Assembly: GCA_002269645.1 (NCBI GenBank) | Contig: NIVC01002086.1 | Span: 1-64,000, forward strand | Source of the DNA: Macrostomum lignano | Lineage: Eukaryota | DNA: 64,000 bases | Direction: 5' to 3' | Shown: piece after piece, positions 5,089 through 61,628 of the stretch | Layout of the letters: each line of letters begins with the position of its first letter | Position numbering within the stretch: the stretch's first letter is position 1 | Made by a program: the position numbers and the translations under genes | The notes under the pieces: generated by a model | What the model saw: the letters and a program-made list of their open reading frames with translations, nothing else | What the model was told of the DNA's origin: nothing | Database searches by the model: none

Positions 5089-5122
<34 letters not shown>

Positions 5123-7640: not shown

Positions 7641-8699
7641 TCTCGCTTACAGCCCTGACGAAGAAATTTAATGTCGAAATATCGGCTACTCAATTTAAAT
7701 TGATTTTTTCAGTCCTTTCTGACTTTCTACCGTGTCAGTGCCCGAGATTGGAGGCGCCCTCCTCTCTCTCTCTCTCTCCCTCTCTCTCCCTCTCTCTCCC
7801 TCTCTCTCCCTCTCTCTCCCTCTCAGTCTCTGTCTGCCAATATTTATGCGCCCTGAAATAAGTGAACGAATTCGCGACATTTGTTAAATCAATACTCTAC
7901 TTCTCAACTCTGAATCTGCACTCTAAATATCCTCTCTGTATTCAAGAATTGATAATTCACTCATAACCCTGCATCAACAGTTACCTAACTAACGAATAAA
8001 CGTTAGCTCTGCTGATGAGCAAACTGCCTTGAACTGCCAAACTTCCAGTGTTCCATGTGATTCTTTAAGTAGAAAGAGACGATACTGAGCAGGCATTTCA
8101 CGCATGCATAGATTTGGCAGCCTCTGCAAATAGGTGGGCGGGACAGAGTCCAGATTCGTGACTTCGAGGTAAAATAAATGAAAGAAGACGGATATGGCTG
8201 GTCTGACTTCTGGTTTTTTTGGCGATATTGGATTTCAAAAAGCGATGTTTTCTTGGGATATTCTCCCCATACAGAGGGATCAGGTGACTGATTCTGACTG
8301 TCTTGTTCTCAGGAAACATCCCTATCCTTTCTGCGAGCTGATCACAAGGTTTTGAGCTGCTATGAGTTGAGGTGTAGAGTGACGCCTCAAAAAATTAAGC
8401 AACTTGATATAAAAAACATTTTAATATTTGCAGCACGCTACTATTGACAAATAGTAGTTAATAGTAGGCAGTTGCGAACATTATCGCATTTTCTTTATGA
8501 CATCAGCTTTCTATTTCTATTAGCCCTACTCATGCTATCGTTTCCTTTAATCTGCTTTAATTGACAGTTGTTAGATTACAATCGGGGGCTCTATACGAGC
8601 TGAGTGCACGATGTACTCTGCGACACTAAGTCAAAAACTTCTGTGTGTATGTGTATGTATCAAATTAGAGATCTATATGCCCACAACCATACAGCCCTG

Positions 8700-21100: not shown

Positions 21101-22611
21101 ACCTGCTTGCAACTGCTGCAAGTGCTAGTTCTGTGCGCTTTGGGTTTTAACAGCATTGCCTATGCTAAGCTGGGATTCCCAGTCATTTTACTGCTGCAGA
21201 TGCCTGTCAGGTGAGTGCAGAATTAATTACAGAGAAATGCAGTAAGCGCTTATAGTTTACTTTACTTACTCGCCAGGTTAATATTCAATATAGCTATCGG
21301 TATAACTTGTTTTAATTGTTTTTTGCATTTTAAGACCCTCGTCGGTCGAAAGTGTGAGTAGCAACAAACGTAGCAATAAATATATTGTATATCATATATT
21401 ACATCGATCTTTATATAATTATTACGTATGGGCACTTCGGAGCGGAAGTGGATGGGCTGGGAGCGTTTACGGACACTCGTCCAGAGCTACGACAAGAGGG
21501 AGGTGCGGACAAGTGTACAGACACTTGAGAGGTGAACACGGCTCTGGAGGCGTACAGACACTTCGCAGATCCGAGTTAAGACTGCGACGGGAAGGAAAGA
21601 ATTCAGAAGTAGATAGGGATAAATAAATAAAGAGTAACACTTTCTTACCTGGAGAGGTTACTCGATGCGCTCATGAACGGCTGACTTCGCTTCGCTTCTT
21701 TGTAGAATTCTATATTTCTGATGAATATCTCACCTTTCTTTCACTAACTTAAGCACGCGAAGGACTATAGAGGGGTTCAGGGAGAGTAGTGCGTGCACAT
21801 TAATACTGCACACGGTGGGGTGAGAGCAGGGCTGGGGGTTGGGGCAAAGTCACACAGGGCTGGGGGTTGGGCCAAAGTCACATAGGGCTGGGGGGTTGGC
21901 GCAAAGTCACACAGGGCTGGGGGGTGGGGGCAAAGTTACACATGCAGGGGGGGTTGGGGCAAAGTCACACAGGGCTGGGGGTGGGGGCAAAGTTACACAT
22001 GCAGGGTTGGGGCAAAGTCACACAGGGCTGGGGGGTGGGGGCAAAGTTACACATGCAGGGGGGGTTGGGGCAAAGTCACACAGGGCTGGGGGTGGGGGCA
22101 AAGTTACACATGCAGGGGGGGTTGGGGCAAAGTCACACAGGGCTGGGGTTGGGGACAAAACTCACAGAGTTGAAGGGCGAGAGAGAAAGAAGGAGGGAGG
22201 CTAGCCAATCAGGAGCCTCCACGGCTAGAGACCTGATTTGGACTAGCCCAAACGAGAGAGAAACGGAAACGGGATCCAGCCAATCAAAATGCAAACTACG
22301 ATAAAACTAAAATGACAACAAGAATGGCGGAACAACAAGAAAGACATTGGGCAGATCAGGATGAGCAAGCGGAAGGGAGAGGAGAGGTGGAGCCGGTTGG
22401 GACTCGGGGCAAAGGGCATTGTGAAGCGCAGCTCGCAATTAACATTTACGTATAAATTGTCATGATATGATATAATCGTAAAGCTTTGTTGAATGATAGC
22501 TATGTTATTGAACAGGAGTACAAGAAGCTTTCATCTAAAAATTTCAGACACCTTCTAATACCAAAGGTAATCAATGAAAACTATTTGGACGCACTGGACA
22601 AACCAATGTGA
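9123..22611 (+). CDS. SLC4A11: SLC4A11-like (BTR1/NaBC1) solute carrier, about 846 aa, 17 coding exons
   Basis: Exons assembled by hand with GT-AG sites and matching phases: 9123-9279, 9909-9946, 10039-10300, 10391-10475, 10577-10700, 10802-11011, 11624-11705, 12217-12339, 12847-12960, 15892-16098, 16178-16436, 16969-17075, 17156-17321, 18290-18466, 19912-20107, 21041-21210, 22548-22611 (2541 nt). Family motifs: [113 protein letters not shown], and the terminal [15 protein letters not shown]. The first two exons are less certain. Confidence 0.93.
11741..12133. mobile_element. Tc1/mariner-like MITE, TA TSD, in SLC4A11 intron 7
   Basis: TA|CGAGGCATGGCCGGAAAGTTCGGACAC at the left end; GTGTCAGAACTTTCCGGATATCCCTCG|TA at the right end. 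Confidence 0.65.
12401..12660 (+). mobile_element. tRNA-derived SINE, near full length, in SLC4A11 intron 8
   Basis: A box TGGCCCAGTGG (12411) and B box GGCTCGATTCC. The body is shared with copies at 15155-15330 and 8700-8870. Confidence 0.7.
14291..15148. mobile_element. Probable solo LTR (858 bp) in SLC4A11 intron 9
   Basis: Perfect terminal inverted hexamers TGTAGT...ACTACA around GC-richer non-coding sequence. No TSD found; a SINE fragment abuts the right end. Confidence 0.45.
15155..15330 (+). mobile_element. 5'-truncated copy of the same SINE family
   Basis: Near identical to 12455-12640 (ggctcgattccaagtgcagtcacattaatttgg...gggccgctgtacactcctgtgtgagtgtgtgcctg). Confidence 0.75.
17945..18235. 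repeat. 21-bp minisatellite (CAAAACCGACAATCACCAATA) in SLC4A11 intron 13
   Basis: Period of 21 seen directly (18061 to 18082). Confidence 0.9.
21430..22445. mobile_element. About 1-kb GC-rich insertion in SLC4A11 intron 16 with an internal G-rich tandem array
   Basis: TTACGTAT direct repeat at 21422-21429 and 22446-22453 with a sharp GC contrast to the flanks. No TIRs or TG..CA ends. Confidence 0.4.
21832..22155. repeat. G-rich minisatellite (GGGGCAAAGTCACACAGGGCTGGGGGT alternating with a variant unit)
   Basis: Multiple G3-G7 runs per unit. Confidence 0.9.
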
Positions 22612-23486
22612 CGGCTGATTGTAAATCGCAAATTGTGAAACAAAGTTTCCTCCTTTAGATAATTATATTTCTTAACGGAAAGTCTCATGACTAAGTCTCA
22701 GATCTCAATGAATAGCGCATTGATTGTTGATTAGTCATTTGTTATTTATCGTTTGTTCCCGTGAAAGTGCGTCTTTAGTCTCTAAAAAACTCCTTGATGT
22801 CAGTGTTTTTCATTCCTTTGTCCCTATAGTCAATATAATGTGCAAATGTTTTTGTGTGATGGATCTTTTTTTGCTAGTAATTTCGCAACCAGTTTCTCTT
22901 TAGTTTCGTATTTTTAGTCTAACTAACCAGAACAGTAGTACGGACTGTTGCATAGATATATTTTTTCCTAAGTTTACTACTTTAAATGTGCATGTAGGTT
23001 TGATGGTTAGTCTAAGCAAAATTCGAAATATTTTTCACTGGACAAACAGCGCCACAAAGTATAACAGCGTAGCAACTGAATAACGTTTTCTCAAATCTTG
23101 TTTGTGGAAAAGCGCGCAATCATTTTTTTACTTGTTTACATGTTTCTCAGCAACAAACTATAGCTCCCATTTTTATTTTATTGATTGACAAGAATCTATC
23201 TAAAGTTTTACACAATTTGTTTGAACAGAATCCTAATCTTAAGCATATATATTTTATTTTCATCTAGTAGAAAATTATTTTGTATCAGCGTGGCAAAAAA
23301 TTGATAGAGGAAAACACGTTTTAAAAACCATAGGCAAACTAATTTTTTTTGTTTTTTGTGGTCTCTCTGCCTGCTCCAATATAATATAAAAAATAAATAT
23401 CATATTTGAAAAGCACGCAAAATTAAATGGCAATAGCTACAATTTACTCGGCTGATTTTAAACAAAGAGTTCTGAGATCTTGCTAC

Positions 23487-24377
23487 TGAAGTAGACGCCG
23501 TTGGCTTCCCGGTTTAGGCACTTTAGTTTATCTTAAGTCTCGAGCCTCTCGGAAGCCTTTTTAGCTCTTAGTAGCGTAGGTAGTGCTGCCACCAGTTCCT
23601 TCAGGTCTCGGCCTTCGGTGAGGTCAGCTTCCCGTCGGAACGAAAGAAGTAAGTCAACGAACTCAGCAGCGTGTGCATATTTGCAGCTCAACGTACTGGG
23701 CGTCTCGTCAGCAGATGCTGCCGGGCTCGATGGGTGGATGGGAGGGCTGTGTTAGCCTCTCGTAGGCTTGGGGTTGGCTTAGGTGGGTCTCATTCAGACC
23801 AATAGCAATGGGTCAAACGTACTCAGACACAGAACAGGCGTTCGCGCACTGAACTCGGAAATTTGAAGCCTCCTTGATTGAAGCCTCCTTGATTGAACCA
23901 AGGGTGAAGGGGGTCTGCATTTATAGCGCGGGATTCACCACTGCCCTAACGCACAAGACCTCGTGACTTTGTTCTATTTTTAGAACTGACATCACTGGGG
24001 CCTCCAGGCAGAGTGCACACGGCTGTGACTCAGTGTCTATTTTTAGAAACATGAGTCACTCCTCTTCTTATAGAGAAGGGAAGGGCCTTAGGTACGTGAT
24101 TCTCCCGTAAATACAGACCAGCGAGTGCAGTAAACATGTTTACTGCACTTTAGGACTCCAAGAAAGCAAGATCTGTCATGTGACTTGCTCACGTTTCAGA
24201 AAACGGGCAGAAAACGGGCGCAGAAAACGGGCAGAAAAGGGGAAAGGGGCAACGAACAGACCGACAGAAGGGAGGTGGGAAGCTGACCAGCGGCAGACAG
24301 CAACCCAGGGCGAGGGCGAGGGCGAGGGAAACTGCTGACTTAGTGCGACGCCTAAAACCAACTAGCGGATCACTACA
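23487..24377 (-). mobile_element. Solo LTR, 891 bp, 4-bp TSD
   Basis: Starts TGAAGTAG and ends CACTACA. CTAC is duplicated at 23483-23486 and 24378-24381. A TATAAA-like box reads on the minus strand near 23920. Confidence 0.75.
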
Positions 24378-24427
24378 CTACTTTGTTTAATAAAACGACA
24401 TATTTTAGGACCTGACTGATTTGAAAT

Positions 24428-24681
24428 TAAAATCCAGAGAAAAAAATTGATTGATTGATTAACTGATTGATTTATTGATTAGTTAGTTAATTGATTTATT
24501 GATTCATTGATGAATTAGTTTGTTGGTTAATTGGTTGATTGATTGATTGATTGATTACAACTGTACTTAATTGATTTATTGATTCGTTGATCCATTGGTT
24601 GGTTGAATGCTTGATTGATTGATTGATTGATTCATTGATTGATTGATTGATCGATCGATTGATTGATTGATTGATTGATTC

Positions 24682-24712
<31 letters not shown>

Positions 24713-24735
24713 CATTAATTCATTCATTGATTGCG
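24428..24735. repeat. (GATT)n microsatellite
   Basis: Seen directly. Confidence 0.9.
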
Positions 24736-25149
24736 CGGCCCAAGCTTAGGCTAATAAGGAGAGAGAGTTATTTGTCTGGATGATAGACACGATGCATGCG
24801 GTACCGTATGTATATCTGCACTAAATTCTACTCAAGAATATTATCAGAGAATCTGAGGAGTATCGAAACAACGACAAAGAAAGGACAAGATTCCATCCAT
24901 CATGCTGTATATGGTCACTCGTCAAAGGATTCCCTCCCTGCTCATCGATGAAGCTTTAACCCAGAATGGCACAGCACAATTCAGCAGAAGGAGCAGACCG
25001 CATCTGAAAATCACAAGACAGTTCTGCGGCAGTGCAAGTCCAAAAACCCGACCTCGCGTTAGTGTTAGTTTAGATTTAGTACAGCCGACTGGGGCAGTCG
25101 AAAGCTCAATTTGTCGAGTGAATAAGAAACAATGAGTTGAAAGGGCAGA

Positions 25150-27270
25150 TGGTGTAGATGATGGACTCGTTGCAGGAGATACTGTTATGTACGCTCGTAC
25201 ATAACAGAGGGGCCAGTAAGGCCGCTTTGCTATCGGAGTGCATGACAATAGTCTCTCCTCTCGTACCCTTGGAGTTCAGCTCTGCAGCGCAGGAGCTGAT
25301 GGCAAGGACTTCGTTCTGGAAGACTGTGGAGAGTCTGCCAGTGTGCTGGGCATGCGTGGCAATGACGCGGCCGTTGATGATGATGCAGACCCCAAAGCCG
25401 GCATGGCCGTTTTAATGGATCCATCCGTGTAGCAATGCATCTCCTGGAAATTCCAGTGGTCAGTGGCAACATTCCTAGAGGGGATGGTGACCTTGTAGCG
25501 CTGAAAGAGGTTGAGAGTGCGGGGTTCACCGTCAGATAAGACGTGGAGCCCGTCGCCGTCTCTCAAGTCTTTGAGCCTCATCGCAGTTGCGCGAGGATTG
25601 CGAGGGCTCTCTTTTGCTTTTGCATGAACGTAGGGTGACCAGTTCAGCCTGTGGTCCCGGGTAATACCTAGACATTTAGTTTGCTTGCAGAAGGAGATTT
25701 CCCTTCCGTAAAGCGTGAGCGGCCGAATCTGCCACTTGGTCCTGCCGGTGAACATGATCGCTGCGGTCTTAGTCTCAGAGAGCTTTAGACCACAACGATC
25801 CGCCAATTGCTCAGCGGCGTAGATGAAATTCTGAACAAGGTTCCTGAGGGTATCAGGGGACGGACCAGATGCCACCGCGGTAACACCGTCCGCATATCCT
25901 ACTTTCAGAATGGGGTCAGGCCGAGCATCCCGAAGGAGCTCATCGATGACCATATTCCAGAGAACTGGAGACAGCACCCCACCTTGCGGGCTACCTTTGC
26001 AGACGGGGACCGTCCTCTGGTGGCCCAGCAGACTGGCGGTGGCCGTGCGATGGCTAATCATGTACATGATCCATCCGGTGATATGTGAGTGCGTTTGCTC
26101 TCACAAAGAGCTGTTCGGAACGCCTCTGAGGGGCTTGTTCTTCAGCTCTACAGAGAGAAGGCGCCGTGCTTTGGCAGTCTCTCCATCAGCTTGACCAGGG
26201 AGGAGGTCAGGCTGATTGGTCTGAAGGATTTGATATAATGGTAGTCCGGGCGACCTGGCTTAGGGATGAAAATCACCTTTGCCTCGGTCCATAACCAAGC
26301 GTGATGCGCGCCCAATAAAGGCTGCAAATTTTACGCAAGAAGTCTGGGCATTTAACCGCCTTTCTTAGAAGGGCCGGTACAATGCCGTCGGGTCCTGGGG
26401 CTTTGAAAGGTTTGAAGGAATTAGCCGCTCTCACGATGCGGTCCTCCGTGATGATAGAGGCAGCCAGCGCGTGGCCTCCCGCCGAGTGATCCGGAGTGGT
26501 CGGGTGAGCTGGCTCGTTGGGAAAAAACGCAGAGAGCATCACATCAAGCGTTTCCCCTGGGTTGTCCGTGGACGTACCGTCGGTGCGTTTGACCGAGGAA
26601 AGCTTAGACATTTTGTCCAGCGTAAGCGCTTTAACAATTCTGGAGGTGGGGCGTGAGCCCTCTAGCTCTTGGCAGTATTGTCGCCATTTCTGAGCCTTTG
26701 CATTCCTAACCTGCCTTTTTAAACTCATGGATTGCTTCATGATAGGCGGCTTGGTCCGCTGGGCTCTTAGTTTTAGTTGCTCTTCGGTGGAGTCTCTTAG
26801 CTCTGCGACGAAGATTGCCGAGCTCGGGATACACCACGGCGCAGATTTTTTACCTTTATGCCTCAAAGGCGGCGGTTAGCGTTTCTGTCAACACAGTCGC
26901 GCACTCATCCGCCTCTCGGCATGACGTGATCGTGGATGGTTGGCCAGGAGACCGATGGAATTCTTTCAGGCCGAGCCCGAAGGTTTCCCAATCAGTGTTT
27001 CTGGTGTTCCATCTCCACGTAACACGAGTTGCGCTACGCGCGGTCATCAGGTTGAAGGAAATGAACTTGTGATCAGAGAGTGAGGACGCTGGAAGGACTC
27101 GCCACGCCTTGTAGAGGTAGAGCCTGGGTGTTGCGAGCGTTGCGTCGATCACCTCCGACCACCGTCCGTTGTCAAAAGTAGGAGTGGACCCAGAGTTGCA
27201 GAACTCGAGGGTCGTAGAGGCAACGTAGGCTAGGAGGTCTTCGCCTCTCTGATTAAACGCCCACCATACT
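25150..27270 (-). mobile_element. Degenerate non-LTR retrotransposon (APE endonuclease + RT + RNase H; I/R1/LOA-type group)
   Basis: EN: RGEDLL...N.GSTPTF...VIDATL...LSDHKFI. RT: FKAPGPDGI, KVIFIPKPG...FRPISLTS, PQGGVLSPVLWN, YADG (YADD-like). RNase H: YTDGS...HSDSKAAL. Frameshifts are present, RT subdomains 2-3 appear largely deleted, and both ends are truncated. Confidence 0.9.
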
Positions 27271-27663
27271 CACTGGGGCAGCACTGTCCATGATCAATGT
27301 ATGAAATAAATGAAGTATTAATTCTTTTATTATTTGGTTTGCAGGTAGACTCTAATCAGGCCCCGTTATTTTAAATATGTCAGACTTAAACTTGAGAGAA
27401 TTTTATTTCGAAATTCAACTTCAGAACTCTGGAAACTGCGGAAAGCGTGTGAATAACTTCATTGTTGCTATAATCAGACAGTTTCAAAGTGATTAAAATA
27501 TAGTTGGTTGCATTAAAAGGCGCAGGTTATTGCGTTAAAAGGTTATTGCGTTAAAAGACTGGTTATCAAGGTAAAAGACAGGTTATTGCGTTAAAAGGTT
27601 GCGTTTGAGTTAAAAACTTAATAACCAGCATTGCACGATCGGATTCATTGGCCTCTCCACAGC

Positions 27664-28870
27664 TCAAACAAACGGCGACACGCACTCGCACAGCACTCTG
27701 TACTTTTCCAACGACTCCCAGAAATCAGCCAGGTTGTTCGAATTGTGATATCGACCGATTGCATTTTCGCCATGTGGCCCGAAGTTGCCCGGCTCCACCG
27801 CGTTCCACAGGCTGTCGTCAAGGGTGATGTTGCAGCTGGCCCAGTGCCAGCCGCCTCTCGGCTCGGGACTTCCGGGAGTCCGGTAGCCTCCGAGCCACAT
27901 CGTGAATCCGGCGCTGTACTTTCTGTAGATCGTCTCCACGTGGCTCATCACGGTGGCGTCCATCACGTCGGCCATGATCACCAGACCGCTCTCCGAATCG
28001 CACTTCTGTCTGCTCGGCCACCAGAGATCGGCGTTAAAGTGCAGCTTGTACTTCACTCCGCACAGGTCGTCTCCGTAGCCAGACGGGCACAGCGCGCCCG
28101 CCTCGAGTCCCGGCTGCTGCTTAACAAACACCCGGACTCTCCTGGAGCAGCCGCAGTCCCTCAACAACTTGCTGCACTTGTCGAAAACGAACAGCTGGCA
28201 CGAACCGTCAGCAAGGCCGAACGCCTGACAGCGCGGGTTAAAGTGGCATCGGATGGCGCAAGCTGTCACGGATCCGGCCTCCGGAGCAGTTTCAACGAAG
28301 TCGCTCCTGATGCACAGGTAGCCTTCGATGACATGGGCGTAGGAACGTTTCAAAAAGTGGGGGGGGGCAGGTTCAGTGACGGATTTAGGGGGGGGGGGGC
28401 GCACAGGGTGCACGCCCCCTCGAGTTAGATTTTTTTATATGGAAAATGCACATTATCATGTACCGATTATTTTCAGACTCCATCTGGTCAGCACTCATTT
28501 TATAAAGCGCCGCTGGCACTCATTTTGGCGCCGCAGGCCCGCATTTTAGCACCGCAGGCACTCATTTTAGCGCTGCAGGCACTCATTTTAGCGCCGCAGG
28601 CACTCATTTTGGCGCTGCAGGCGTTATGTTTTGTCGCCCTGCAGCAAAATGCATTCGTGAAAAGCAGCAAACACCAAAAATAAGCACGAAGTCTACATTT
28701 TACATTTAAAATGTGAAGGGGCCAGATACCATTACTGGCCCCCCCATTTTAAAAAGTGGGGGGGGGGGCATGGCCCCACTGGCCCCCCCGTTCCTATGCC
28801 TAAGTTCGATGAGGCTGAAGCAACCGGAGGTGTTGCTCAGTGGCAGCAGAGCAGCGAGTAGCAGGACCAT
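27664..28870 (-). pseudogene. Secreted PAN/apple + C-type lectin-like gene (241 aa once the MITE is removed), coding exon interrupted by a MITE
   Basis: 28870-28805 encodes a signal-peptide-like MVLLLAALLPLSNTSGCFSLIE. It joins in frame with 28323-27664 (GYLCIRSDF...CAIRCHFNPRCQAF...SCQL PAN pattern; CTLD with QKC, MWLGG, WHW, WNAVEPGN, VLCE) when 28332-28804 and one TSD copy are deleted. No other stops or frameshifts are present. Confidence 0.8.
28332..28804. mobile_element. 473-bp hAT-like MITE with 8-bp TSD
   Basis: TSD TTCGATGA at 28324-28331 and 28805-28812. Imperfect 15-bp TIRs CATGGGCGTAGGAAC / GTTCCTATGCCTAAG. Internal G-runs and about five 20-bp GCGCCGCAGGCACTCATTTT repeats (28505-28625). 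Confidence 0.88.
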
Positions 28871-29299
28871 AGCAGGCTTAGTGGGACTCCCAGCGACACG
28901 TCTGTCTCGAGCCGAAGCGCTTCTAGCAGCTAGTAAGGGGCGCACAAGCAGTCGCACCGCACTTCTGCCGCCGGCTCTTTTACTGAGCCATTTATCGACA
29001 ACTCGATGCATCGAGAAATTTTTACAGGTTACTAGGCAACCGTTGATCAAAGAGTTAAAAAATTTCTCTAGCAATTTATTTTCAATTCAATCAAAGCAAT
29101 GATTAAGGATTTAAGTGCTTTTATTGTTTGACTACCTGCTTTATCAAAGCCCTCTCTTCAAAGAGAAATTTTAGATCAGAGCCATTTTTATGAATCTAAT
29201 GTGCCCGTTAGATGTGGAACATTTGGGATATTGCAGCTAGCTTAACACATTCATGCGCCATAAGCTATCAGCCTAAAAAGCAGTATTTTTGCCTATTTG

Positions 29300-30540
29300 A
29301 CAATGAAGCTGTTATGGCTGCCAGCCAAATGAACAAAGCCAACGCAGGCGTTGCGAGGGAAGGAGAGGAGAGGTCGTTCTGCAGCTAGATGCAGAGTGCG
29401 AAGTCTCTCAGAGCGGTGCAGCGGTGGCATTGGCGTCGCCACCTCTGGTTGCCAGTCGTCAGGCTGCTGCGGAGCCTCCGTGTCGTCGGCCCCGTCACCC
29501 CAGCCGTGGTGGTCATCCAGAATGTGGCGGCTGATGTGCCAGCGGCTGCCATCGAACAAAGTGATCGTGTTGCCCTCACGACTGCGACTGTCTGCGGCTC
29601 GAAAAAGCCGCTGCTGAGCTTTCCGCGCCTCGGCCGGCGGACGCGGATGCGGCTCCAGACTGTCAGCGCTGCGTCCTTCAGCGGGTGGTTTTGCTTGCGT
29701 AGCCGACGGTGGCATTTGGCCTGCTGCTGTCGCTCCGTGACGCTGCGCCGCAGTTCCTGGTCCGTCGTTGACTCGGTGCTTGCTGGTTGAAGACGCTCGA
29801 GAAGCAGGCGGAGCTTCCGTCCCAGCATCAGTTCAGCGGGCGTTGAATCTCGCTGTCGCACTCATGGCACAGCGCTAGAGGCAGTTCGGGTATCGACATG
29901 GTCGAAGACTCCTCGGGACTCGACCGCAGCAATCTGATGTCTGGAAGGCCCGAGAACTCTGCAGTTCAGCTTGTCCATCAGGTAGATTTCCATCAGGTCA
30001 TCGCCGTTCATGACGACGGTGAAGGTAAACGACGGGAGCTGGACGCAGTCGAACTCAACCGTGGCGTTGACCCCGCCGTAGACGCTGATGCTGGAGCCGT
30101 TTTATGACACGAGCTGTCTCCCAAACGGTCGCAGGGGATCCCGACGCTGGCTCTCTTGTACTCGCCCTTCTCGTCCGTGCTCACGGCAAAGATTCTTTGT
30201 TGAGCGGAGCTGTCGAAGTCGACGCCTTCAATCTTTTTCCGAGCCGAGTTCGGTGCCGCAGTGCTGCTCCTGTGCACGCTGGCGAAGTTGTTGAGGGTGG
30301 CATGACGCAAGTTTGCCTCGAATGCGTGCACGCCTTCGCCGCTCCGCTGGATGCACAGCCGGAAGTCATAGCGCTTGGCATACACGCTGATGGTGGGCTG
30401 AAACTGAAAGTGCTCATTGAGCAGTTTTCTTGCCGCTTCAAGTATCCCTGGAGCTTCATCTGGAGACTTGATGAGAGTCCGGTAGACTCGCACTCCTTCC
30501 CGCCCGAGTACTCAGCATACCAGACTCATAGACTGATAGA
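29300..30540 (-). mobile_element. Internally deleted Ty3/Gypsy-type LTR retrotransposon relic (gag, protease remnant, integrase C-terminus)
   Basis: gag-like LGREGVRVYRTL...LNEHF...KRYDFRLCIQRSGEGVHAFEANLR; protease-like FTFTVVMNGDDLM; integrase tail TPAELMLGRKLR, DGSRWH and LHRSERLR. No RT, RNase H or DDE core was found between them. Confidence 0.72.
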
Positions 30541-31817
30541 TGTACATATTGATCACTCACATGATTTCGTGAGCGAATATCCTTAAAGTGGGTTGACTTG
30601 ACCGACAGGATAAATTTGTTCACTACATGCAGATTTTTTCAGCCCCAAGTGAAAAGCGACAGTAGCTGAGATTGAGCTTAAAATTGCATACTTTTTCTGT
30701 TTTAAAATGTATGAGAAGTCAATTAGATTTTAGCTAGTTGAAGCAATACAATTGCATTGTTAATTTTATCCACAAGCTTTCAAATGCTATTTTTTTCTCG
30801 TCTAAAACCAAAGTGAAAAGCAGACAGCTTATCGAAAATACCTTATGCTAAAATGCTACTGAATATGTTTTCTGTAGCGTTGTTGAGATGTAACGCACAG
30901 AGAGTGTTTAAAGCGATTGTTTCAAGAAAAAATATATCACAGAATCATTTTGTTTGCTAGGCTAATGCCTGCGACGTCTTGTCACTGGTCACATCCGACA
31001 GTTCCCGCAGTCTCAACGGAGGCGCTTCCAGCGAATATTCTTTTCTGGCTGAGCAGAGTAGCTTTGAACTCCGAGATGCTTCTCGCTGGTGGATTTATCC
31101 TATTTATTGCTGAGATCCTTCAAGAGCTGAATTGGCAGTTGGTGGCTGCAGTTTTACTGAACGTTGAAGCAGAAGATTCAACAGAAATTCATCCCAATCG
31201 CAAAGTCAGCACGTGGCACGTCCAAGCCCCCACATTTATATCATACGCAAAGTGTCTAATGAAAGCCAAGCTATGTATTAATTGAGTTAACTTTTTCACT
31301 AGATAAGAGACTGAACCTCTGCTTCTACTTCGACGATTGCTTCAACAGCATCATCTATACTGGTAGTTAGTCGTTTTACCATGGTGTTCAGTTAAAGTTT
31401 CAGGCTGCTATTCCCGATGGCACGAGACGCAAAGTGGAATGGGCGCTTGAATCCATTCAGAATCACATGGGTGTGAGTCTTGATTGGACTATCATTAGCT
31501 TTTGACCAAATATAGTGACTGTTGACCAAATAAGAAGCTTTGCGATTTCTGCATTCCCTATCCCCGTTCCTCCATATTTGTTGCTGTTCTACTGAGTATA
31601 ATCACAATATACTAAACTCAAACTTATTTCTTAGTCCTCTTTTTAGTCTTCGGCACTGAGAATCAAATTGACTGAAAATTTACCATAGACTTGGTCTTCC
31701 ACGGGAAAAGACGAACCTAATTAAATGGCCGACAAAACCGATGGAGGTTAATCTATATTAATATCATATCTGTCGCATATCTGTGAAACTGCATGGTCAA
31801 AAAGTATCAATTTCACC

Positions 31818-32435
31818 ATGAACGATTCAAGCTGCCAGCTCAATGACAACCGCAGTGCTAACAACAAGAACAAGCTAAATTTGACTCAGCAGACAAAAGA
31901 TGAGGCTGAGGATGGCGAGGATGAATTCGAAGAAGATGGCAACGAGGTGCAAAATGACGAAGATCAAGAAGACGGAGGAGCAGAAGAAGAAGAGGAGGAA
32001 GAGGAAGTTGAAGGGGGCGATGCCGACCAGGGCGCTGAGGAAGAGGATGAAAGTGAACAGCAGGCGTGTGAAGACGAAGATCAAGAAGATGGAGACGATG
32101 GAGAAGAAGGTGAACAATGTGAAGAAGAAGAAGAAGAAGGAGAAGGAGAAGAGGAAGATGGAGAAGAAGGAGAAGAGCAGGACCCAGCCGAAGAAGACGA
32201 TAATGAAGAAAGATTCGAAGACAGCACCCAGCAGTCGAAGAAAGCCAGCAAGAATCGGCACGCGGTCGACCAAGCAGAGAACGAGGACGAAGACAATTTT
32301 GAGGAAGAGAACAGCGCCAATGCGGCCAATGTCCAGCAGGATGCTCAGGCAGAGGATGAGAGCGCCGAAGACGACGTCCTCGTTGATGTGGACCAGCAGG
32401 AGGCTGACCGGGCGGCTAGCGACGAAATATTTTAA
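31818..32435 (+). CDS. Highly acidic (D/E-rich) 205-aa ORF of unknown function; may be the last exon of a larger gene
   Basis: Open frame with a good ATG context (ttcaccATG) and non-periodic mixed GAA/GAG/GAT/GAC codons, so it is not a simple microsatellite. It ends in SDEIF* followed by AT-rich UTR-like sequence. Confidence 0.55.
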   Translation: MNDSSCQLNDNRSANNKNKLNLTQQTKDEAEDGEDEFEEDGNEVQNDEDQEDGGAEEEEEEEEVEGGDADQGAEEEDESEQQACEDEDQEDGDDGEEGEQCEEEEEEGEGEEEDGEEGEEQDPAEEDDNEERFEDSTQQSKKASKNRHAVDQAENEDEDNFEEENSANAANVQQDAQAEDESAEDDVLVDVDQQEADRAASDEIF

Positions 32436-33454
32436 AACTTGTATGAAAAATTATTTTATTATGCGTTTTACTTGTATAAGTTAAACAGTGCGATATCCGT
32501 GTGTACGAGACAGTTATTGTTTACTCGGTATTTTTTAACTCAATTTTCTTTACAAGAGACCCTGCTGCTCGCTCGCATGTATCCCTCTATAAAAACCTCG
32601 TTGGAGGACATCGTGACAACTGCGTTTTACGTGTACACAACCCTATAGCTGCTGTTAGTCATTAGCAAGTCAAAAAACACGAAGCCTTCACAACTATTTA
32701 AGAAGGTACAGAAGAAATCAACGTTCTATATTGAATTGTATTCGTTTTATTCGTAGAGTAATCGCTAATCCTTCGGTTTACGATTATTTATTCACCTGCA
32801 TTTTGGTTCCCAAACCCTATGTTATTTTCCATTTTAGCGATCATGGCCTGCTCAAAAGAAACAAAAAACTGTTAAACTGGGCTTATTCGTTTCGCTAGAA
32901 AAACTGAACGGAATATAGCCGAGCTATGGTGTCTCCCGTGGCATATACTGTATGGCGATGACGGGGATCCTATACATGTACATCCACTTCGGTTTACGAT
33001 CCTTTAAATGGGAGAAATACATGTAAATGATCGTGAATCGAAGGTAGTGCGTATTTAGATACTGTATTTACACACTGTGCACGACTATCAAACTACGTAC
33101 TGCATACACATGTACGAAATGAAAGCTTTATTTGGTCGGGGTTGCATGGAAGGACGGTCAGTAGCACAGAATACTGTGATATTCTGTGGTCAGTAGGTCA
33201 AACCGTATAGCGCATGTACATGTATGCGCAAATGTACTTGTAGCAGAATTAAAAACACTGACTCATTAATTCACCAGTTGCCTTGCAGCCTCAGTTGCCT
33301 TGTGCTTAAATGCACCTCATTGCCTGGACTTTTTAAGTCAACTTTTATGTAAATGCATATAGTACAAGTTGTAGAGTTATGAATAATTATTCATAAAATG
33401 CTACTGTAAGTAGACTAATTCAAACATGCGCAGCAAAACTTAAACTGTGAATCA

Positions 33455-33745
33455 GGTTACTATTTATAACGAAACTTATGAATCATGTTACTATTTATAA
33501 CGAAACTTATGAATCATGTTACTATTTAAAACGAAGATTAATCGTCTTACTATTTATAGCGCAAAGAAGAATCATGTTACTATTTATAACGAAGATTAAT
33601 CGTCTTACTATTTATAGCGCAAAGAAGAATCATGTTACTATTTATAACGAAGATTAATCGTCTTACTATTTATAGCGCAAAGAAGAATCATGTTACTATT
33701 TATAACGAAGATTAATCGTCTTACTATTTATAGCGCAAAGAAGAA
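33455..33745. repeat. 58-bp tandem repeat made of two related 29-bp subunits
   Basis: Period of 58 (33541 to 33599) with a shared TTACTATTTATA core. Confidence 0.85.
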
Positions 33746-35976
33746 TCATGTTACTATTTTTACCGATAAGCTAGATGAGTTATGTTGCGATTTATATTTC
33801 TCAAAAATTGCCTATAAATGCAAGCGAAAAATCCGAGCTAAAATCTCAGACTCGGAGCAGCCTCCAAAAGATATCTTGAGCTTGCTGGGAGCAGCTAAGC
33901 GAGGCTAAATCTCTGAGGGAAATAAATACCGTTCGGTAAGTCTTTGTTCGAGCCTTCGTTATTTGATTATTGAGAGCCTTGTTATTACCGACTGTTACTA
34001 ATCAGTTAATTTTACTGAGTTTATTGAATTTGAGGCCTTCCCTTTTCCTAAGGGATTGGATAGGATCTGCAGACAGATTCCGATACCTTTAGAGGATTCT
34101 TAATTGATTGATTTTGATACCCTAGAGTAACAGATAAGGGCACACGACTCTGATTCTGTTATTTCCAGAAGAAGACGCCCTTCCTGGAGGACCTCGTTAT
34201 TATTGTTATATAATTGACTTTGTTATTAGGGCGCATCTCCGATTTTGTTTATTGAACACATTGACGACAATTTAATTAAAGTGTGCTCTCATATTCGGCC
34301 GACTTCGTTCAGAGTCAACAGCGAGAATTCTTAAGCGCGCAACTGCAACCCGGACTGCAAAGAAGAGGAGCCCGCACAAGTGATCACTGAATTTTGTTCC
34401 CAGCTAGGCTTAAGGTCTGGAAGTGGGAGTTTTCGAGTGACTACCACCCGATTATACATGCGCTACAACCTGTGCAACACTAGCAATTTTCTTCAGTATC
34501 TGTCGGTTACATGTCGCTTCACTCCTACAGGTACATATGCTAAGATGCGTTGAATTTTTGATACCATCAATTCTAGGTTTTTTTAAAACAAAAGACTTAT
34601 AGACAGGTTATATGTATTACATTTTGTCTGGGTTTTGGATTAGGGGTGTTGTTGTTTGTTATCTGTTTACCTACCAATTAAATATACGCTTGCAGTCAGC
34701 CACGCCGCTCTCTCCCTTCACTCCTGGGTTTTCGCTTCGCTTCTCGCGGGCCCCTTAGCCGTCGCATTCAATTGCTTTAGTCGCACTAAAATTAAGCAGC
34801 TACCAATCCAAACCTAACCTTCAATTCAACATACCAAATCTGCAATTTACGCTAAGGGAAGTCGGCTGCTGGCTCTAGATTATTAAATTTAACCGCTACA
34901 CAAACCGTACGTCTTCCCGCCTTTATTCGTCACACTGTTTTTGTATAATTATTCCCTTCTTAAAATCTTGTCGTTCTGTTGTTAGTCGTTAGTCGTTCGA
35001 AAAAACCGTAAAAATTCCAGACGCTCTTTCAAATACCTACTTATAAAAATATCATTTAAATCGTAGGGGCCTATTAATCGATCAAGAAATAATCAACCTT
35101 TTGAACAAATATTAAATACATCGAATCATATTGGCAAAACAGGCTCTTTGCCTGAGCCAAACTTACTACTACTACTACTACTACCATGCAGATGCGTGGA
35201 CTTTATTAAATATATAGGGCCTATACATGCAGCAATACAAACCTAAATCAGATAGTTCTGTGTTAAAGATACATAGTTTATAGTTAATAAGCTACTTAAT
35301 TTGCCTAATTTAATTGTAATGGCTAGGGTTCCGGCACTGGAACCCGTTTTCTAATGGCTAATGATCCAGCAGTCTTCTGCAGGCAGGCAGTTATCTACTA
35401 ATAATGAAGTCTTGAACATAAGAAGTATATTGATTTGAATATCATCGTTTCGTTTTGATCTTAGGCCTATCTTGAACAAAATCTCAATATCAACCACCTG
35501 TTAAAAAGTAAAATGTTTCTGCTATATTATACCCATAAATATAGCTATTAGAAAATGGGTTTGTGCCAGAACTCTAGAAATTGCCTAATTTAATTTAAAC
35601 AGTACATTGCAAAACTAAAACTGTACTGTTCTCTGTAATTAGGCCCTAAGCAAACAAATTTTTTCAGTTTTCATATTTGTAATTTAAATGAGACATTTTC
35701 ATTTTCAACTTCAAGTGCTGTTTTAATGTTTTATCTAATACCTTTTAAATCCATTAATCTGTCAAAATCATGTTAAATAGGCCTAATAATTTTGATTTTT
35801 TCAAGATATATAGGTAGGGGCCTATAACTATTCCAAATTCCATTTGTGTTTGTCCTAGGCCTATTGTAGTATTGTATAGGCTATAATATTAATATATTAG
35901 GCCTAACTTTGTTCTTTGGTAGGGAGTCGGGACTTCAATAAGGGTCCAATTACTTGCCAAAATATGCATTCAAAAG

Positions 35977-38643
35977 CTGGGTTTTTTTTTCGCCAGAGAT
36001 AAGGTGCAAAATCGCACCTTGTGCCAAATTTCAAGGTGCGATTTTAAGGCTCAGAGTGCAATTTCTCTTGAGTCTTGTTTAGAATGTGAGGGTTTCACGA
36101 GAGATATTCAGACAGACATTCGAAACGATCGTCTGTAACTTTAAACAAAATTGACCCGCTTCAACCATCTTTTTGGCAAATACTTACGCAAGTGTTGGGC
36201 ATCGAATAAGCTTTAATTTATTAACTGAAGTAAAAATCCTTCTGACATACATTGATTTAAAAATTGCTTAGCAACACTCTGATTAGAAATCACTTTACTG
36301 TTGACTAAAATTGTTTTGATCGTAGCAGCCTAAAAGCAGATACTGGATTTAAAAATGCTTCGATTTACTCTATACGCATGTCTCAGCTTTAAAATGACAC
36401 CTCAGGCGTTGCAAAAGACAGCTTTGATGCTGAGATATTTGACACTAAACAATTGCTTTGCGCAAACTCACATTCAGAAATTTCACTGATTTTTATTGAT
36501 ATTTGTGCAGCTGCCATGTCCTTGTTTTTTTCATCAGAAACTTGTCAAATTCTAGTCATGTCCAGTTTAAACCTGGACTTCTCCTAAACTGTCTTAAGTA
36601 TTTGATTTTTAATGATGCCTGCCTTTATATTGCATAGATTGTACCTGAGTCAGTGAGTCTGTGAGTATACATTTGTATATATGGCGACCAATCATGACTT
36701 TTTCACCGCTTTGCGGTTCAAATAAATATACGAGTGTACAAGAAACATGTTCCAACTGTTATTGAGAGAAATTGACGTCGCGTTTATTAACAGTCAGTGG
36801 CAATTAATATGAAGCAAATAGTTTATTGTTATGTTTTTACTTTTTTTGCGTGGCAATTCTGCTATCCAAATCGGAATGAGGTAAGCGGTGGGAATAAAAT
36901 AAAAAGGAAGAATTTTTTCTACTGTTGTTGCAACCCAATAGCTATATGTACTTCAAACTTTTTAGATTGAACAGGCGATTTCTAATGTACTGCTAAGCTT
37001 TCCAATCCCTATGGACTACCGTAGCAGTTCTTAACTTTTTTTGTCTTGACTTCTAGACTCGGAATTCGGAACAACCTAAGGAGCCGCATGAAAATATTTA
37101 ATTGGATAAAGATATTTTCTAAAAACAGCTCAAGTCGTGACACATCTTCTTCTCACCTCAGTCCATCAACTGCTGCTCCTTCGGAGACCGAAGCGATCGT
37201 GAAAGTAAAACAGATCAGTTTAGATCCCATGGCCATGAATACAACCATTTCAATTGTGAACCTGCTTCGCTTACGAGTATGAGCACTAGCCTTCCATTTG
37301 ATGCCATTAGCTCACTTAACTCTGAAATAGTTCAAGGATGGTTCCAAATGTTGAGATCTGATGTAGAAGCAATCCAATTTGCGGAAATTTATCAACTGGA
37401 CTCCATGAATCACTCCAATGAAAGGCGGCGAATAGCTGCAGAATGCGTAAACAAGTTTAAGTGAGTCACAAAAACCCCATTTACAGTAACTACATACACT
37501 TGTACATTAGCAAGGCTCCATGCGATGGTTAATAAATGGAGAAGTAGACAAGCATCTGAACAAATATTGAATAAAAATCAGTGAAGTTTCCGAATGTGAG
37601 TTTGAGCAAAGCAATGTTTAGTGTCGAATATCTCAGCATCAAAGCTGTCTTTTGCAACACCTGAGGTGTCATTTTAAAGCTGAGACATGCATATAGAGTA
37701 AATCGAAGCATTTTTAAATCCAGTATCTGCTTTTAGGCTGCTACGATCAAAACAATTTTAGTCAACAGTAAAGCGATTTCTAATCAGAGCTAGTGTTGCT
37801 AAGCAATTTTTAAATCAATGTATGTCAGAAGGATTTTTACTTCAGTTAATAAATTAAAGCTTATTCGATGCCCAACACTTGCGTAAGTATTTGCCAAAAA
37901 GATGGTTGAAGCGGGTCAATTTTGTTTGAAGTTACAGACAATCATTTTGAATGTCTGTCTGAATGGGTCTCCCTAAAACACACCCCGCACCGCCCTGCAG
38001 CGCTACACATTAAAACAAATTGGACTATAACTAAAGACACTTCAGAATGCGTTTTCTGTTAAGCTTCAAGTTTTTATTAAATTTAGTTTTTTTACTTTGA
38101 AATATAAAATTCGGTGAACAATAAGTGATATTAATAATAATATTAATAAAATAATAATATTATAAATTAATAATGAAAATGAGAATATAAAAAAAATTAT
38201 AATATTTGAATAAATAAATAAAGATATTTCTTCCATTACTATTTTAACTTTTCCTTGCAATCAAATACTGCATTGACAAAAAATGTTATAATGTGTAGCG
38301 GTTCGGGGCCCGGTGCGGGGCGTGTTTTAGGGAGCCCCTATCTGAATATCTCCCGTGAAACCCTCACATTGCTCACATTTCTGACAACTGGGAATGTATA
38401 TTTTAATATCTTACATAAGGCTATAGCTATAGGCTATATCGCCTATATGACTTAATAGGATTTAAAGAGTTATTTTGTTTCATATTTTAAGGCAGTGCAT
38501 AAAAAATAGCTTAAGCATGGTTAAGCCTTTAAAGAAAAATGGTTATAAGACCGCACCTAAACCGTACCTACTTTTTTAATTTCAGGGTGCGATTTTAAAA
38601 TTTAGGGTGCATACGCACACTCTGCGCACAAAAAAAAACCCTG
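35977..38643. mobile_element. 2.67-kb non-autonomous hAT-like element with long internal inverted arms
   Basis: 8-bp TSD TTCAAAAG (35969-35976 and 38644-38651). Termini CTGGGTTTTTTTTT / AAAAAAAAACCCTG. An internal inverted repeat of about 430 bp pairs 36083-36513 with 37552-37964 plus 38341-38370. Confidence 0.82.
37965..38340. mobile_element. 376-bp MITE nested in the right arm of the hAT-like element
   Basis: Imperfect TIRs of about 45 bp (GGGTCTCCCTAAAACAC...CTACACATT) around an AT-rich core. TCTGAAT is duplicated at 37958-37964 and 38341-38347. Confidence 0.7.
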
Positions 38644-55380: not shown

Positions 55381-56394
55381 AATCCAGCCATAACCCTTAA
55401 TAAAATATAATTCTATTAACATTAATATAACCCAACCGAATCCCAAACTCATACCTAACCTTATAACTCTACCATATCCATATGGTAGAGACAATAGACA
55501 GCAATCTAAATAGACAGCAATCTATTTATGGCAGTCAAGTTGCAAATTAATTTGAATAATAAATATTTTATATTTTGACAAAAAATTGCCAAATTGTCAA
55601 TCCTGTATTTGCATTTTAATTTTACAAGTTCATGCAAATAAACATCAGATACTATTTATTATAAGTTAGCATTAAAGGCGTGTATTATTTTAGCTAAATG
55701 ATTTTCGTTAAAGTATAGTCAGCAAAAGTATTAAAAAATTATGAACAAATAAAGTGAAAGACGCTTAACTATAATTAGTGTATGTACGTGTAAGAGTATT
55801 AATTTCATGTACACGTAATATTAGATTTGCATCAGGTATAAATTTAGAGCAATTTCGGTCTTAACAGTTGTTTTAATGAGAAGTGCAAACATAACTGACT
55901 GAATTTTTTGCTGAAGAATGAATGCTAAAGTTTGTTGTTCAATGGCTATAGGAGAGTAAGAAAGTACAAACCCGGAAATTCCGGAGACGTTATATTTTAA
56001 CAAATTTCAAGATATCAAATGTAGAAACTATATTTGGTTGTTATTTAGTTATCGCTTTTTGCAGACCATTTTAGCTCACAACCATTGAATTTTAATCCAA
56101 AATATGTTTGCATAAGTAATGGAGATTGTGTCCATATGCAACAAATGAAGTTTAAAATGAATTGCATTGCTTTTTTCCTCACTGCTTGTGCCATGTCTAA
56201 ATGAGAATCTGGGGGTGAAACTTATTGCTTATTGCTCCATTGCTTTGACTAACATACCTTGGATTGAATTCAAAGCGTGTAAATAATGGACTAGAAAACG
56301 GGTTGCAAAAATAATAGGCATATAATTAACTTACGACGAATAATAGAACAGGAAAGGTTGGCAGTGGATAAAAATATAGCATTTTCCAAACCAA

Positions 56395-61450: not shown

Positions 61451-61628
61451 AAACCTAGAGGAATGTCAGGGCTTTAATGTATCTAAATTCTATTTATCCC
61501 TCATGTCAAACTATAAAACCCAACATTTCACTATTTTATAAAACTACAAATTCAATAATTAAACTAGCCAGCAAAAACAAAGACTGTTAGCCGATAAATA
61601 AATCCTTATATATTTGCGTGAATCCAAG

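What the first reader, a model, noticed from the sequence alone, without database searches (positions are those of the whole stretch)
27664..28870. hAT-like MITE inserted in the coding exon of an otherwise intact secreted PAN/C-type-lectin gene, with possible splice rescue
Seen: a perfect 8-bp TSD, 15-bp TIRs, and in-frame restoration of a 241-aa signal peptide + PAN + CTLD protein on removal, with no other lesions, so the insertion is probably recent. Also seen: the second TSD copy plus the next base forms an AG acceptor (..tcatcgaag|GCTAC, phase 1). A phase-1 GT (GCC A|gtgggg) lies about 25 nt inside the element, and the far end of the MITE is in frame with the lectin body (ORF 28413-27664). 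Established: introner-type DNA transposons create introns by co-opting TIR or TSD splice sites. Inference: this is either a fresh knockout allele or an intron-gain event in progress.
Basis: partly seen in the sequence, partly recalled or inferred. Interest (0 to 1): 0.75.

Follow-up and report, generated by a model that had tools for sequence, protein, structure and literature searches.

The report
Old MITE-disrupted flatworm lectin pseudogene
A small hAT-like transposon does sit inside the coding exon of a Macrostomum lignano PAN/C-type-lectin gene, but a diverged duplicate of the locus carries the same insertion and has decayed further, so this is an old, ordinary pseudogene and not a fresh knockout or a nascent intron.

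Summary
The sequence facts hold. A 473-bp non-coding element (28332-28804) has 16-nt terminal inverted repeats (13/16 matching) and perfect 8-bp target-site duplications. It interrupts codon 22/23 of an intronless 241-aa PAN + C-type-lectin gene on the minus strand. Deleting it restores the frame, with no gap relative to three uninterrupted homologues.

The window is Macrostomum lignano assembly Mlig_3_7, contig NIVC01002086.1. A duplicated locus on contig NIVC01002519.1 carries the same element at the same site with the same duplications. The two element copies differ by 21 substitutions and 6 indel events (95.1% identity), so the insertion predates that divergence and is not recent.

The sister copy has also gained a stop codon and two frameshifts. 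The window copy keeps an open frame but has replaced residues that the sister copy and the outgroups conserve (V76L, G85V and E147V, conserved in all; S58G, P63S and S75L, in most). dN/dS between the copies is 0.54, not distinguishable from 1. The coding sequence diverges as fast as the flanking non-coding DNA. Neither locus has an annotated coding sequence.

The proposed GT/AG pair exists and is in frame, but it is one of 23 such in-frame pairs. The element's ends carry no splice sites. Verdict: an old pseudogene disrupted by a miniature transposon (MITE). Splice rescue is unsupported, though not directly tested.

The parts
28805..28870 (-). First part of the lectin coding sequence: ATG (28870) to codon 22, MVLLLAALLPLSNTSGCFSLIE. 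It is a hydrophobic, signal-peptide-like N-terminus, and its last 8 nt are duplication copy 1.
28805..28812 (.). Target-site duplication copy 1 (TTCGATGA on +, TCATCGAA on the gene strand).
   Evidence: D7. The same sequence is present in the sister locus L003.
28332..28804 (.). 473-bp non-autonomous element (MITE) with no coding capacity. It has G/C homopolymer-rich subterminal regions.
   Evidence: Its orthologous copy is at L003 6556-6988 (433 bp), 95.1% identical in aligned columns.
28789..28804 (.). Inverted-repeat arm next to duplication copy 1 (gene strand CTTAGGCATAGGAACG; ancestral CATAGGCATAGGAACG as in L003).
   Evidence: I3
28332..28347 (.). Inverted-repeat arm next to duplication copy 2 (+ strand CATGGGCGTAGGAACG; ancestral CATAGGCGTAGGAACG as in L003).
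   Evidence: I3
28506..28622 (.). Internal 21-bp minisatellite, 5.6 units, consensus AGCGCCGCAGGCACTCATTTT. The sister copy has two units fewer. The same unit occurs in other M. lignano MITE-like elements.
   Evidence: Relatives.
28324..28331 (.). Target-site duplication copy 2.
   Evidence: D7
27664..28323 (-). Remainder of the lectin coding sequence (codons 23-241 plus stop): PAN/apple domain, then C-type lectin domain. The frame is open, but there are derived replacements at conserved positions (G58, S63, L75, L76, V85, V147), and EPG replaces the family's EPN motif.
28706..28708 (-). First in-frame stop met by translation from the ATG when the element is not removed (54-aa product).
28778..28779 (-). 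It scores -0.7 bits against a generic consensus.
   Evidence: No RNA evidence.
28323..28324 (-). This AG is host sequence that existed before the insertion.

Best explanation
This is an old, duplicated pseudogene. A non-autonomous DNA transposon inserted into codon 22/23 of an intronless, secreted PAN + C-type-lectin gene of Macrostomum lignano. The element is ~470 bp, with 16-nt inverted repeats and an 8-bp target-site duplication, i.e. hAT-like. It belongs to a group of M. lignano MITEs that share a 21-bp internal minisatellite. The insertion truncates the product to 54 aa. It happened before the two present copies of the locus (contigs NIVC01002086.1 and NIVC01002519.1) diverged by about 4-5%. 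Since then both copies have drifted. The sister copy picked up a stop and two frameshifts. The window copy picked up only substitutions, several of them at residues the family otherwise conserves. Shown: the insertion anatomy, its presence in both copies, the divergence, and the extra lesions. Inferred: that the insertion was the inactivating event (it is the only disabling lesion the two copies share), and that neither copy is expressed as a functional mRNA.
For: Insertion anatomy and frame restoration. No gap at the junction in three homologues. The window equals M. lignano NIVC01002086.1: L004 is 100% identical over 20.6 kb, and neighbouring ORFs are 98-99% identical to M. lignano proteins. 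The sister locus L003 has the same element at the same site, with both TTCGATGA copies. Divergence between the copies: element 21 substitutions in 427 aligned nt plus 6 indel events; coding sequence after the element 25 in 668 plus a 7-bp duplication. Lesions in L003: a 1-bp deletion in the first coding part, TAC>TAG at codon 24, and the 7-bp frameshift. Inverted repeats are 15/16 in L003 against 13/16 in the window. dN/dS = 0.54 (17 non-synonymous, 9 synonymous); p = 0.16 against neutrality, p = 0.01 against omega 0.2. Window-specific replacements where L003 and all three outgroups agree: V76L, G85V, E147V. Where most agree: S58G, P63S, S75L. Coding divergence (3.7%) lies inside the range of the flanking non-coding bins, 1.6-4.8%. 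No coding sequence is called at the lectin position in L003 or L004. The best protein match anywhere is 54%.
Against: The window copy has no stop or frameshift apart from the element, while its sister has three. By my estimate this has a chance of about 0.2 under neutrality: 57% of simulated sets of 13 random substitutions leave the frame open, times roughly e^-1 for no indel. That is unremarkable but leaves some room for residual constraint. dN/dS of 0.54 is nominally below 1. Expression was not examined directly. The absence of an annotated coding sequence is indirect evidence. The two contigs could be divergent haplotypes rather than duplicates. That would change the wording (an old polymorphic or fixed insertion) but not the age argument.
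Confidence: 0.85

Rival explanations
1. Splice rescue or intron gain. The element is removed from the window copy's mRNA as a 457-nt intron, using the cryptic GT at 28779 and the host AG at 28323. The product is a secreted lectin with G23 replaced by LRHRNGGAS, and the gene is still functional.
For: The GT and AG exist, are both phase 1, and give a stop-free product that keeps the signal-like N-terminus and both domains. The change falls between the signal-like segment and the first PAN cysteine, where the homologues vary. A 457-nt intron is within the range of M. lignano introns: the reported means are 1.1-1.4 kb, and a real 766-nt intron with a non-consensus donor, CCG|GTGCGT, was recovered. 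Introners that add codons are documented (PMC9860276). The window copy kept an open frame while its sister did not.
Against: This is one of 23 in-frame, stop-free GT..AG pairs. With five GTs upstream of the first stop, at least one would share the phase of a given AG about 87% of the time. The donor scores -0.7 bits on a generic consensus and the acceptor has A at -3. The element termini carry no splice sites, and exact excision is impossible. The window copy has lost residues that are invariant in the sister copy and outgroups. The coding sequence is as diverged as the flanks. No coding sequence is annotated, and no matching protein exists in UniRef, NCBI or Logan-derived sets.
Confidence: 0.05
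2. A recent insertion in one copy was later transferred to the other copy by gene conversion, so that sharing does not imply age.
For: The two contigs are a mosaic. They are 100% identical over window 29.3-36.0 kb, right next to 93-98% identical tracts. Conversion or identity-by-descent tracts therefore do occur at this locus.
Against: The element lies in the diverged tract and is itself 4.9% diverged, with 6 indel events. That is as much as the surrounding coding sequence (3.7%; dS 5.8%). A recent transfer would make the two element copies near-identical.
Confidence: 0.03
3. The gene was already non-functional or dispensable before the element arrived, and the MITE is a passenger in a dead gene rather than the cause.
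For: Both copies share EPG where all three homologues have the sugar- and Ca-binding EPN motif. The gene is embedded in transposon debris: LINE reverse transcriptase 25.3-27.2 kb and retroelement-like ORFs 29.3-30.6 kb.
Against: Apart from the element, the two copies share no stop or frameshift. All cysteines and most invariant residues were intact in their common ancestor.
Confidence: 0.12

Closest known systems
hAT-superfamily MITEs (non-autonomous Ac/Ds-, hobo- and Tol2-type elements)
   Same: It has an 8-bp target-site duplication, short (16-nt) inverted repeats, small size, no ORF and internal tandem repeats. A related 207-bp M. lignano element (L006 2007-2213) has the classic CAGTG terminus, a perfect 14-nt inverted repeat and a perfect 8-bp duplication, TTTTAAAG.
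   Different: The terminus of this copy is CATAG (ancestral), now CATGG and CTTAG, not YARNG. No autonomous partner or transposase was found or could be searched for. Other superfamilies with 8-bp duplications (P, Merlin, some Mutator) are not excluded.
Ds/dSpm insertions in maize exons that are spliced out through cryptic sites (Wessler and colleagues; cited from my own knowledge)
   Same: A non-autonomous hAT-type element sits in a coding exon. A cryptic donor inside the element end and a nearby acceptor could give an in-frame, slightly altered product.
   Different: In maize the splicing was demonstrated by cDNA, and the alleles are leaky. Here there is no RNA evidence, and the evolutionary signals point to decay.
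Introners (Micromonas, Aureococcus, Symbiodinium and others; PMC9860276)
   Same: These are MITE-like DNA elements with inverted repeats and target-site duplications inside coding sequence. Some families add codons on splicing.
   Different: Introners are families of many similar introns whose ends or duplications supply the splice sites, sitting in genes that stay functional. Here there is a single exonic copy with no terminal splice sites, and the host gene is decaying in both duplicates. No flatworm is mentioned in that survey.
Transposon-disrupted duplicated pseudogenes in the redundant M. lignano genome
   Same: The Mlig_3_7 assembly is more than half repetitive and holds 180 Mb of duplicated blocks at >=95% identity (PMC5730564). 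M. lignano is a hidden polyploid (PMC10468722). A gene broken by a transposon and present in two decaying copies fits this background.
   Different: Nothing material.

Membership tests
hAT-like MITE | 8-bp target-site duplication | tested here: met
   TTCGATGA is 8/8 on both sides in the window and in L003. The related L006 element has TTTTAAAG, also 8/8.
hAT-like MITE | Short terminal inverted repeats (about 10-25 nt) | tested here: met
   The arms are 16 nt, matching 13/16 in the window and 15/16 in L003.
hAT-like MITE | Terminal 5'-YARNG-3' motif | tested here: inconclusive
   This element has CATAG (ancestral), now CATGG and CTTAG: 4 of 5 positions, with T where R is expected. The related L006 element has CAGTG. 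The motif is common in hAT elements but not universal (my own knowledge).
hAT-like MITE | Target-site preference nTnnnnAn | tested here: inconclusive
   TTCGATGA has T at position 2 but G at position 7. TTTTAAAG in L006 fits both positions. Two sites are too few to judge.
hAT-like MITE | Autonomous partner encoding a hAT transposase with matching termini | not testable with these tools
   No whole-genome search of M. lignano was available. There is no transposase ORF in the window or in loci L003-L006.
hAT-like MITE | Multiple dispersed copies (a family) | tested here: inconclusive
   No second full-length copy was found in about 105 kb of M. lignano DNA. Related elements share the 21-bp minisatellite (blastn E 2.4e-10) and have weakly similar termini (shuffle p 0.01-0.03): L006 2007-2213 and window 56600-56727. 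The translated minisatellite also appears in an M. lignano gene model, P0004.
Introner / transposon-derived intron | The element is removed from mRNA by the spliceosome | not testable with these tools
   No RNA-seq access. Indirect evidence: no coding sequence is annotated at either locus, and no spliced-form protein is in the databases.
Introner / transposon-derived intron | Splice sites supplied by the element termini or the target-site duplication, allowing near-exact removal | tested here: not met
   No GT or GC occurs at any of the nine registers across duplication copy 1, read directly from the sequence. The nearest GT is 25 nt inside the element. The AG is host sequence that existed before the insertion.
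Introner / transposon-derived intron | Many similar copies forming introns in unrelated genes | not testable with these tools
   Only about 105 kb of the 764-Mb genome could be read. None of the three related elements seen there lies in a known exon.
Introner / transposon-derived intron | The host gene remains under purifying selection | tested here: inconclusive
   dN/dS is 0.54: p = 0.16 against 1 and p = 0.01 against 0.2. The sister copy has a stop and two frameshifts. The window copy lost three residues invariant in the sister and outgroups. Coding divergence equals flank divergence. The evidence leans against constraint.
PAN/apple + C-type lectin domain protein | C-type lectin fold and sequence signature | tested here: met
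   The family profile hits solved C-type lectin domains: codakine 2.9e-5, mosGCTL-1 9e-5, and snaclecs. Pfam Lectin_C reaches E 0.0034 in 2 of 4 family members, below the cut-off. UniRef names the M. lignano homologue a C-type lectin domain protein. The AlphaFold model was too poor to use (pLDDT 39.7).
PAN/apple + C-type lectin domain protein | PAN/apple domain | tested here: inconclusive
   The profile matches the PAN domain of MIC5 (1hky) at 4.9e-5. Pfam PAN_1 reaches 0.0048-0.033, below the gathering score.
PAN/apple + C-type lectin domain protein | N-terminal signal peptide | not tested
   Only a hydrophobicity scan was run (Kyte-Doolittle 3.2 over residues 1-9). No signal-peptide predictor was available.

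The most novel reading that the evidence does not exclude
The window copy is still transcribed, and the MITE is spliced out through the cryptic GT at 28779 and the host AG at 28323. That would make this an intron created by a hAT-like MITE in a flatworm. It would have been gained before the locus duplicated, retained in one duplicate and lost to decay in the other.
Probability: 0.04. Interest if true: 0.6.

Novelty: new member of a known kind. Interest (0 to 1): 0.15.

Why it matters
It matters little beyond annotation. The result documents one transposon-disrupted lectin pseudogene pair, and a small MITE group in M. lignano that carries a 21-bp minisatellite. It also shows that an 'otherwise intact ORF plus a perfect target-site duplication' is not a reliable sign of a recent insertion in a genome full of duplicated blocks. 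If spliced transcripts did exist, it would be a rare, datable animal example of intron gain from a DNA transposon. The evidence here points the other way.

Tried and rejected
1. I searched for other element copies through a chimeric query of its six-frame ORFs. The only hit was an M. lignano gene model whose N-terminus is translated minisatellite.
2. Two DNA-pattern scans of JGI metagenome contigs, one for the minisatellite and one for the subterminal region plus inverted repeat, gave 0 hits each.
3. Genomic DNA could not be fetched for P0001, P0004 or the 249-aa ORF; none is on record.
5. Exact cluster look-ups of three window ORFs found nothing in the collection.
6. Structure prediction from a 4-sequence alignment gave pLDDT 39.7, so I ran no fold search.
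7. Rfam gave only a chance-level hairpin hit, 21 bits against a cut-off of 90.
8. I looked for an empty site for the L006 MITE in the paralogous L005 locus, but its flanks have no homologue there.
9. A third copy of the locus may lie on NIVC01000184.1, about 33 kb from uL15m. It could not be reached because look-ups accept only proteins from the window or from earlier searches.
10. The extended inverted-repeat alignment beyond 16 nt is dominated by G/C runs and is uninformative.
11. Scoring the donor with a generic metazoan consensus is weak evidence, because a real M. lignano donor recovered here, CCG|GTGCGT, is also non-consensus.

Full report
**What is in the sequence**

The gene lies on the minus strand, with its ATG at 28870. 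The first 66 nt encode MVLLLAALLPLSNTSGCFSLIE. A 473-bp element then occupies 28332-28804, and the frame resumes at 28323 with GYLCIRSDF... down to the stop at 27664-27666.

The octamer TTCGATGA (+ strand) flanks the element at 28324-28331 and 28805-28812, 8/8 identical. The terminal 16 nt are inverted repeats with 13/16 complementary. Inside the element there is a 21-bp minisatellite of 5.6 units at 28506-28622.

Removing the element and one octamer gives a 726-nt ORF of 241 aa. The chance of >=13/16 repeat matches is 3.8e-6, and of an 8/8 repeat at fixed positions 1.5e-5. If the element is not removed, translation stops after 54 aa. The one correction is that the inverted repeats are imperfect.

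**What the gene is**

The restored protein has three homologues at 44-54% identity:
- a Macrostomum lignano UniRef entry named 'C-type lectin domain-containing protein' (P0001);
- two proteins from ~1-kb Logan contigs (P0002, P0003).

In all three the junction region is continuous: FSPIDGSLC, FDGIEGFLC and YEAIEASRG, against FSLIE|GYLC here. In both Logan contigs the ORF is uninterrupted.

A profile of the family matches solved C-type lectin domains (codakine 2.9e-5, mosquito GCTL-1 9e-5) over positions 101-237. It matches a PAN/apple domain (MIC5, 4.9e-5) over positions 35-72. The Pfam hits to PAN_1 and Lectin_C are below the gathering scores. An AlphaFold model from the shallow alignment was unusable, with pLDDT 39.7.

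**Where the window comes from**

Two other window ORFs (57147-58124 and 61629-62207) are 99% and 98% identical to M. lignano proteins. A look-up of the 205-aa ORF at 31818-32435 returned two places in assembly GCA_002269645.1 (Mlig_3_7):
- NIVC01002086.1:21818-42435 (locus L004), which is 100% identical to window 21818-42435, so the window is the first 64 kb of that contig;
- a second contig, NIVC01002519.1:88177-108794 (locus L003).

**The decisive comparison**

L003 contains the same lectin gene with the same element at the same position, flanked by the same two TTCGATGA octamers. The copies are not recent duplicates of each other in this tract:
- The elements differ by 21 substitutions in 427 aligned nt (95.1% identity) plus 6 indel events. 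One of these is a loss of two minisatellite units.
- The coding sequence downstream of the element differs by 25 substitutions in 668 nt plus a 7-bp duplication.

L003 carries further disabling lesions: a 1-bp deletion in the first coding part, TAC>TAG at codon 24, and the 7-bp frameshift.

The inverted repeats of L003 are CATAGGCATAGGAACG and CATAGGCGTAGGAACG, matching 15/16. By repeat symmetry, two of the three mismatches in the window copy are mutations acquired after insertion.

The insertion therefore predates the divergence of the two copies (K about 0.04-0.06). It is not a fresh event.

A gene-conversion transfer of a young element is unlikely, because the element is as diverged as its surroundings. 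Conversion or identity-by-descent tracts do exist next door, however. The contigs are 100% identical over window 29.3-36.0 kb and 93-98% identical over 21.8-29.3 kb.

**Is the window copy still constrained?**

- Nei-Gojobori counting gives 17 non-synonymous and 9 synonymous differences, dN 0.031, dS 0.058, and dN/dS 0.54. This is not significantly different from neutrality (p = 0.16). It is incompatible with the strong constraint expected of a working lectin (omega 0.2, p = 0.01; omega 0.1, p = 2e-5).
- Polarising with the three outgroup proteins shows where the window copy is the derived one. At V76L, G85V and E147V, L003 and all outgroups agree against the window. At S58G, P63S and S75L, L003 and most outgroups agree. 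Both copies have EPG where the family has the EPN motif.
- Coding divergence (3.7%) is no lower than that of the adjacent non-coding and transposon sequence (1.6-4.8% per 250-nt bin) or of the element (4.9%).
- The window copy has no stop or frameshift, but this is not surprising. Thirteen random substitutions leave the frame open in 57% of simulations. With about one expected indel, the joint probability is about 0.2 (my estimate).

**The splice-rescue idea**

The GT at 28779 (CCA|GTGGGG) and the AG at 28324-28323 are real and both phase 1. They would remove 457 nt and replace G23 by LRHRNGGAS. Several points count against reading this as a rescue:
- It is one of 23 in-frame, stop-free GT..AG combinations in the region. 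With five GTs upstream of the first stop, a phase match to a given AG is expected about 87% of the time.
- No GT or GC occurs at any register across the first octamer, read directly from the sequence, so exact removal is impossible.
- The AG is host sequence that existed before the insertion. The element ends supply no splice site, unlike introners (PMC9860276).
- Intron length is not an obstacle. M. lignano introns average 1.1-1.4 kb. A real donor recovered here, CCG|GTGCGT, is also non-consensus, so I do not lean on the weak donor score.
- ORF 28413-27664 starts with GTG and has no in-frame ATG upstream of the lectin body, so it offers no alternative start.
- Neither locus has a coding sequence in the deposited annotation.
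- No protein more than 54% identical to the restored, spliced or read-through products exists in the 5.8-billion-cluster database.
- Direct RNA evidence was not obtainable with these tools.

**What the element is**

No second full copy occurs in the window or in about 40 kb of additional M. lignano DNA. Its minisatellite and, more weakly, its termini recur in three places:
- A canonical 207-bp MITE at L006 2007-2213. Its inverted repeat CAGTGGCATAGCCA is perfect and its duplication TTTTAAAG is 8/8. The minisatellite match has blastn E 2.4e-10, and the terminal similarity has shuffle p 0.01-0.03.
- A 5'-truncated relative at window 56600-56727, nested in a larger long-repeat element.
- The N-terminus of an M. 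lignano gene model, P0004, which is translated minisatellite.

Two independent 8-bp duplications and a CAGTG terminus in the relative make 'hAT-like' the best label. The terminus of this copy (CATAG) departs from YARNG, and no transposase partner could be sought. Superfamily membership is therefore likely, not established.

**Verdict**

This is an ordinary, old, transposon-disrupted pseudogene present in two decaying copies in a highly redundant, repeat-rich genome. The reading 'recent knockout or intron gain in progress' is not supported. I put the residual probability of functional splicing at about 4-5%.

Noticed in passing
window 56373-56970: An element of about 600 bp with long inverted repeats (78 nt at 94%, 61 nt at 84%, 28 nt at 86%). 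Its core (56600-56727) is a 5'-truncated copy of a small hAT-like MITE that ends ...GCTGGCTACGCCACTG and carries two units of the same 21-bp repeat as the lectin element. It looks like a nested or composite MITE.
   Followed up: partly
L006 2007-2213 (NIVC01000184.1:537010-537216): A canonical 207-bp MITE: perfect inverted repeat CAGTGGCATAGCCA, perfect 8-bp duplication TTTTAAAG, and internal 21-mer-like units. It is the clearest relative of the lectin element. No empty site was found in the paralogous locus L005.
   Followed up: partly
window 21818-36067 vs L003: Contigs NIVC01002086.1 and NIVC01002519.1 are a mosaic. They are 100% identical over window 29.3-36.0 kb but 93-98% identical, with several indels of 150-280 bp, over 21.8-29.3 kb. 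The switch lies about 450 bp upstream of the lectin ATG. This could be a gene-conversion tract, an identity-by-descent tract or an assembly collapse.
   Followed up: partly
window 3000-7900: A strand-asymmetric satellite of about 4.8 kb (GC skew down to -0.99, AT skew -0.96). It gives artefactual ORFs of 340-1542 aa (LSLSPS... on one strand, GEREREG... on the other).
   Followed up: no
window 42900-44400: A long minisatellite immediately after the first SMAD (MH1) coding block that starts at 42228. It reads through as the repetitive '[20 protein letters not shown]' ORFs and is presumably intronic.
   Followed up: no
window 25276-27152 (-) and 29293-30586: The lectin gene is flanked by retroelement debris. 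On its 3' side there is a LINE-type reverse-transcriptase fragment (RVT_1, 8e-11). On its 5' side there are ORFs without Pfam hits. Part of the LINE region (26318-26567) is absent from the sister contig.
   Followed up: partly
window 27524-27597: A 16/20-bp tandem repeat (AGGTTATTGCGTTAAA) 67 nt downstream of the lectin stop codon.
   Followed up: no
window 63409-63873: A 30-bp tandem repeat that reads as MATAVSLDSQ about 15 times.
   Followed up: no
P0004 and P0005 (UniRef M. lignano models): Two likely annotation artefacts. The N-terminus of P0004 (GAKMSAY heptads) is translated 21-bp minisatellite. P0005 fuses mitochondrial uL15 with the neighbouring ankyrin-repeat gene (window 57147-62207).
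   Followed up: partly
window 28716-28788: The G/C-run palindromes in the subterminal part of the element form a hairpin. It gives a chance-level Rfam hit (mir-BART14, 21 bits against a cut-off of 90).
   Followed up: yes
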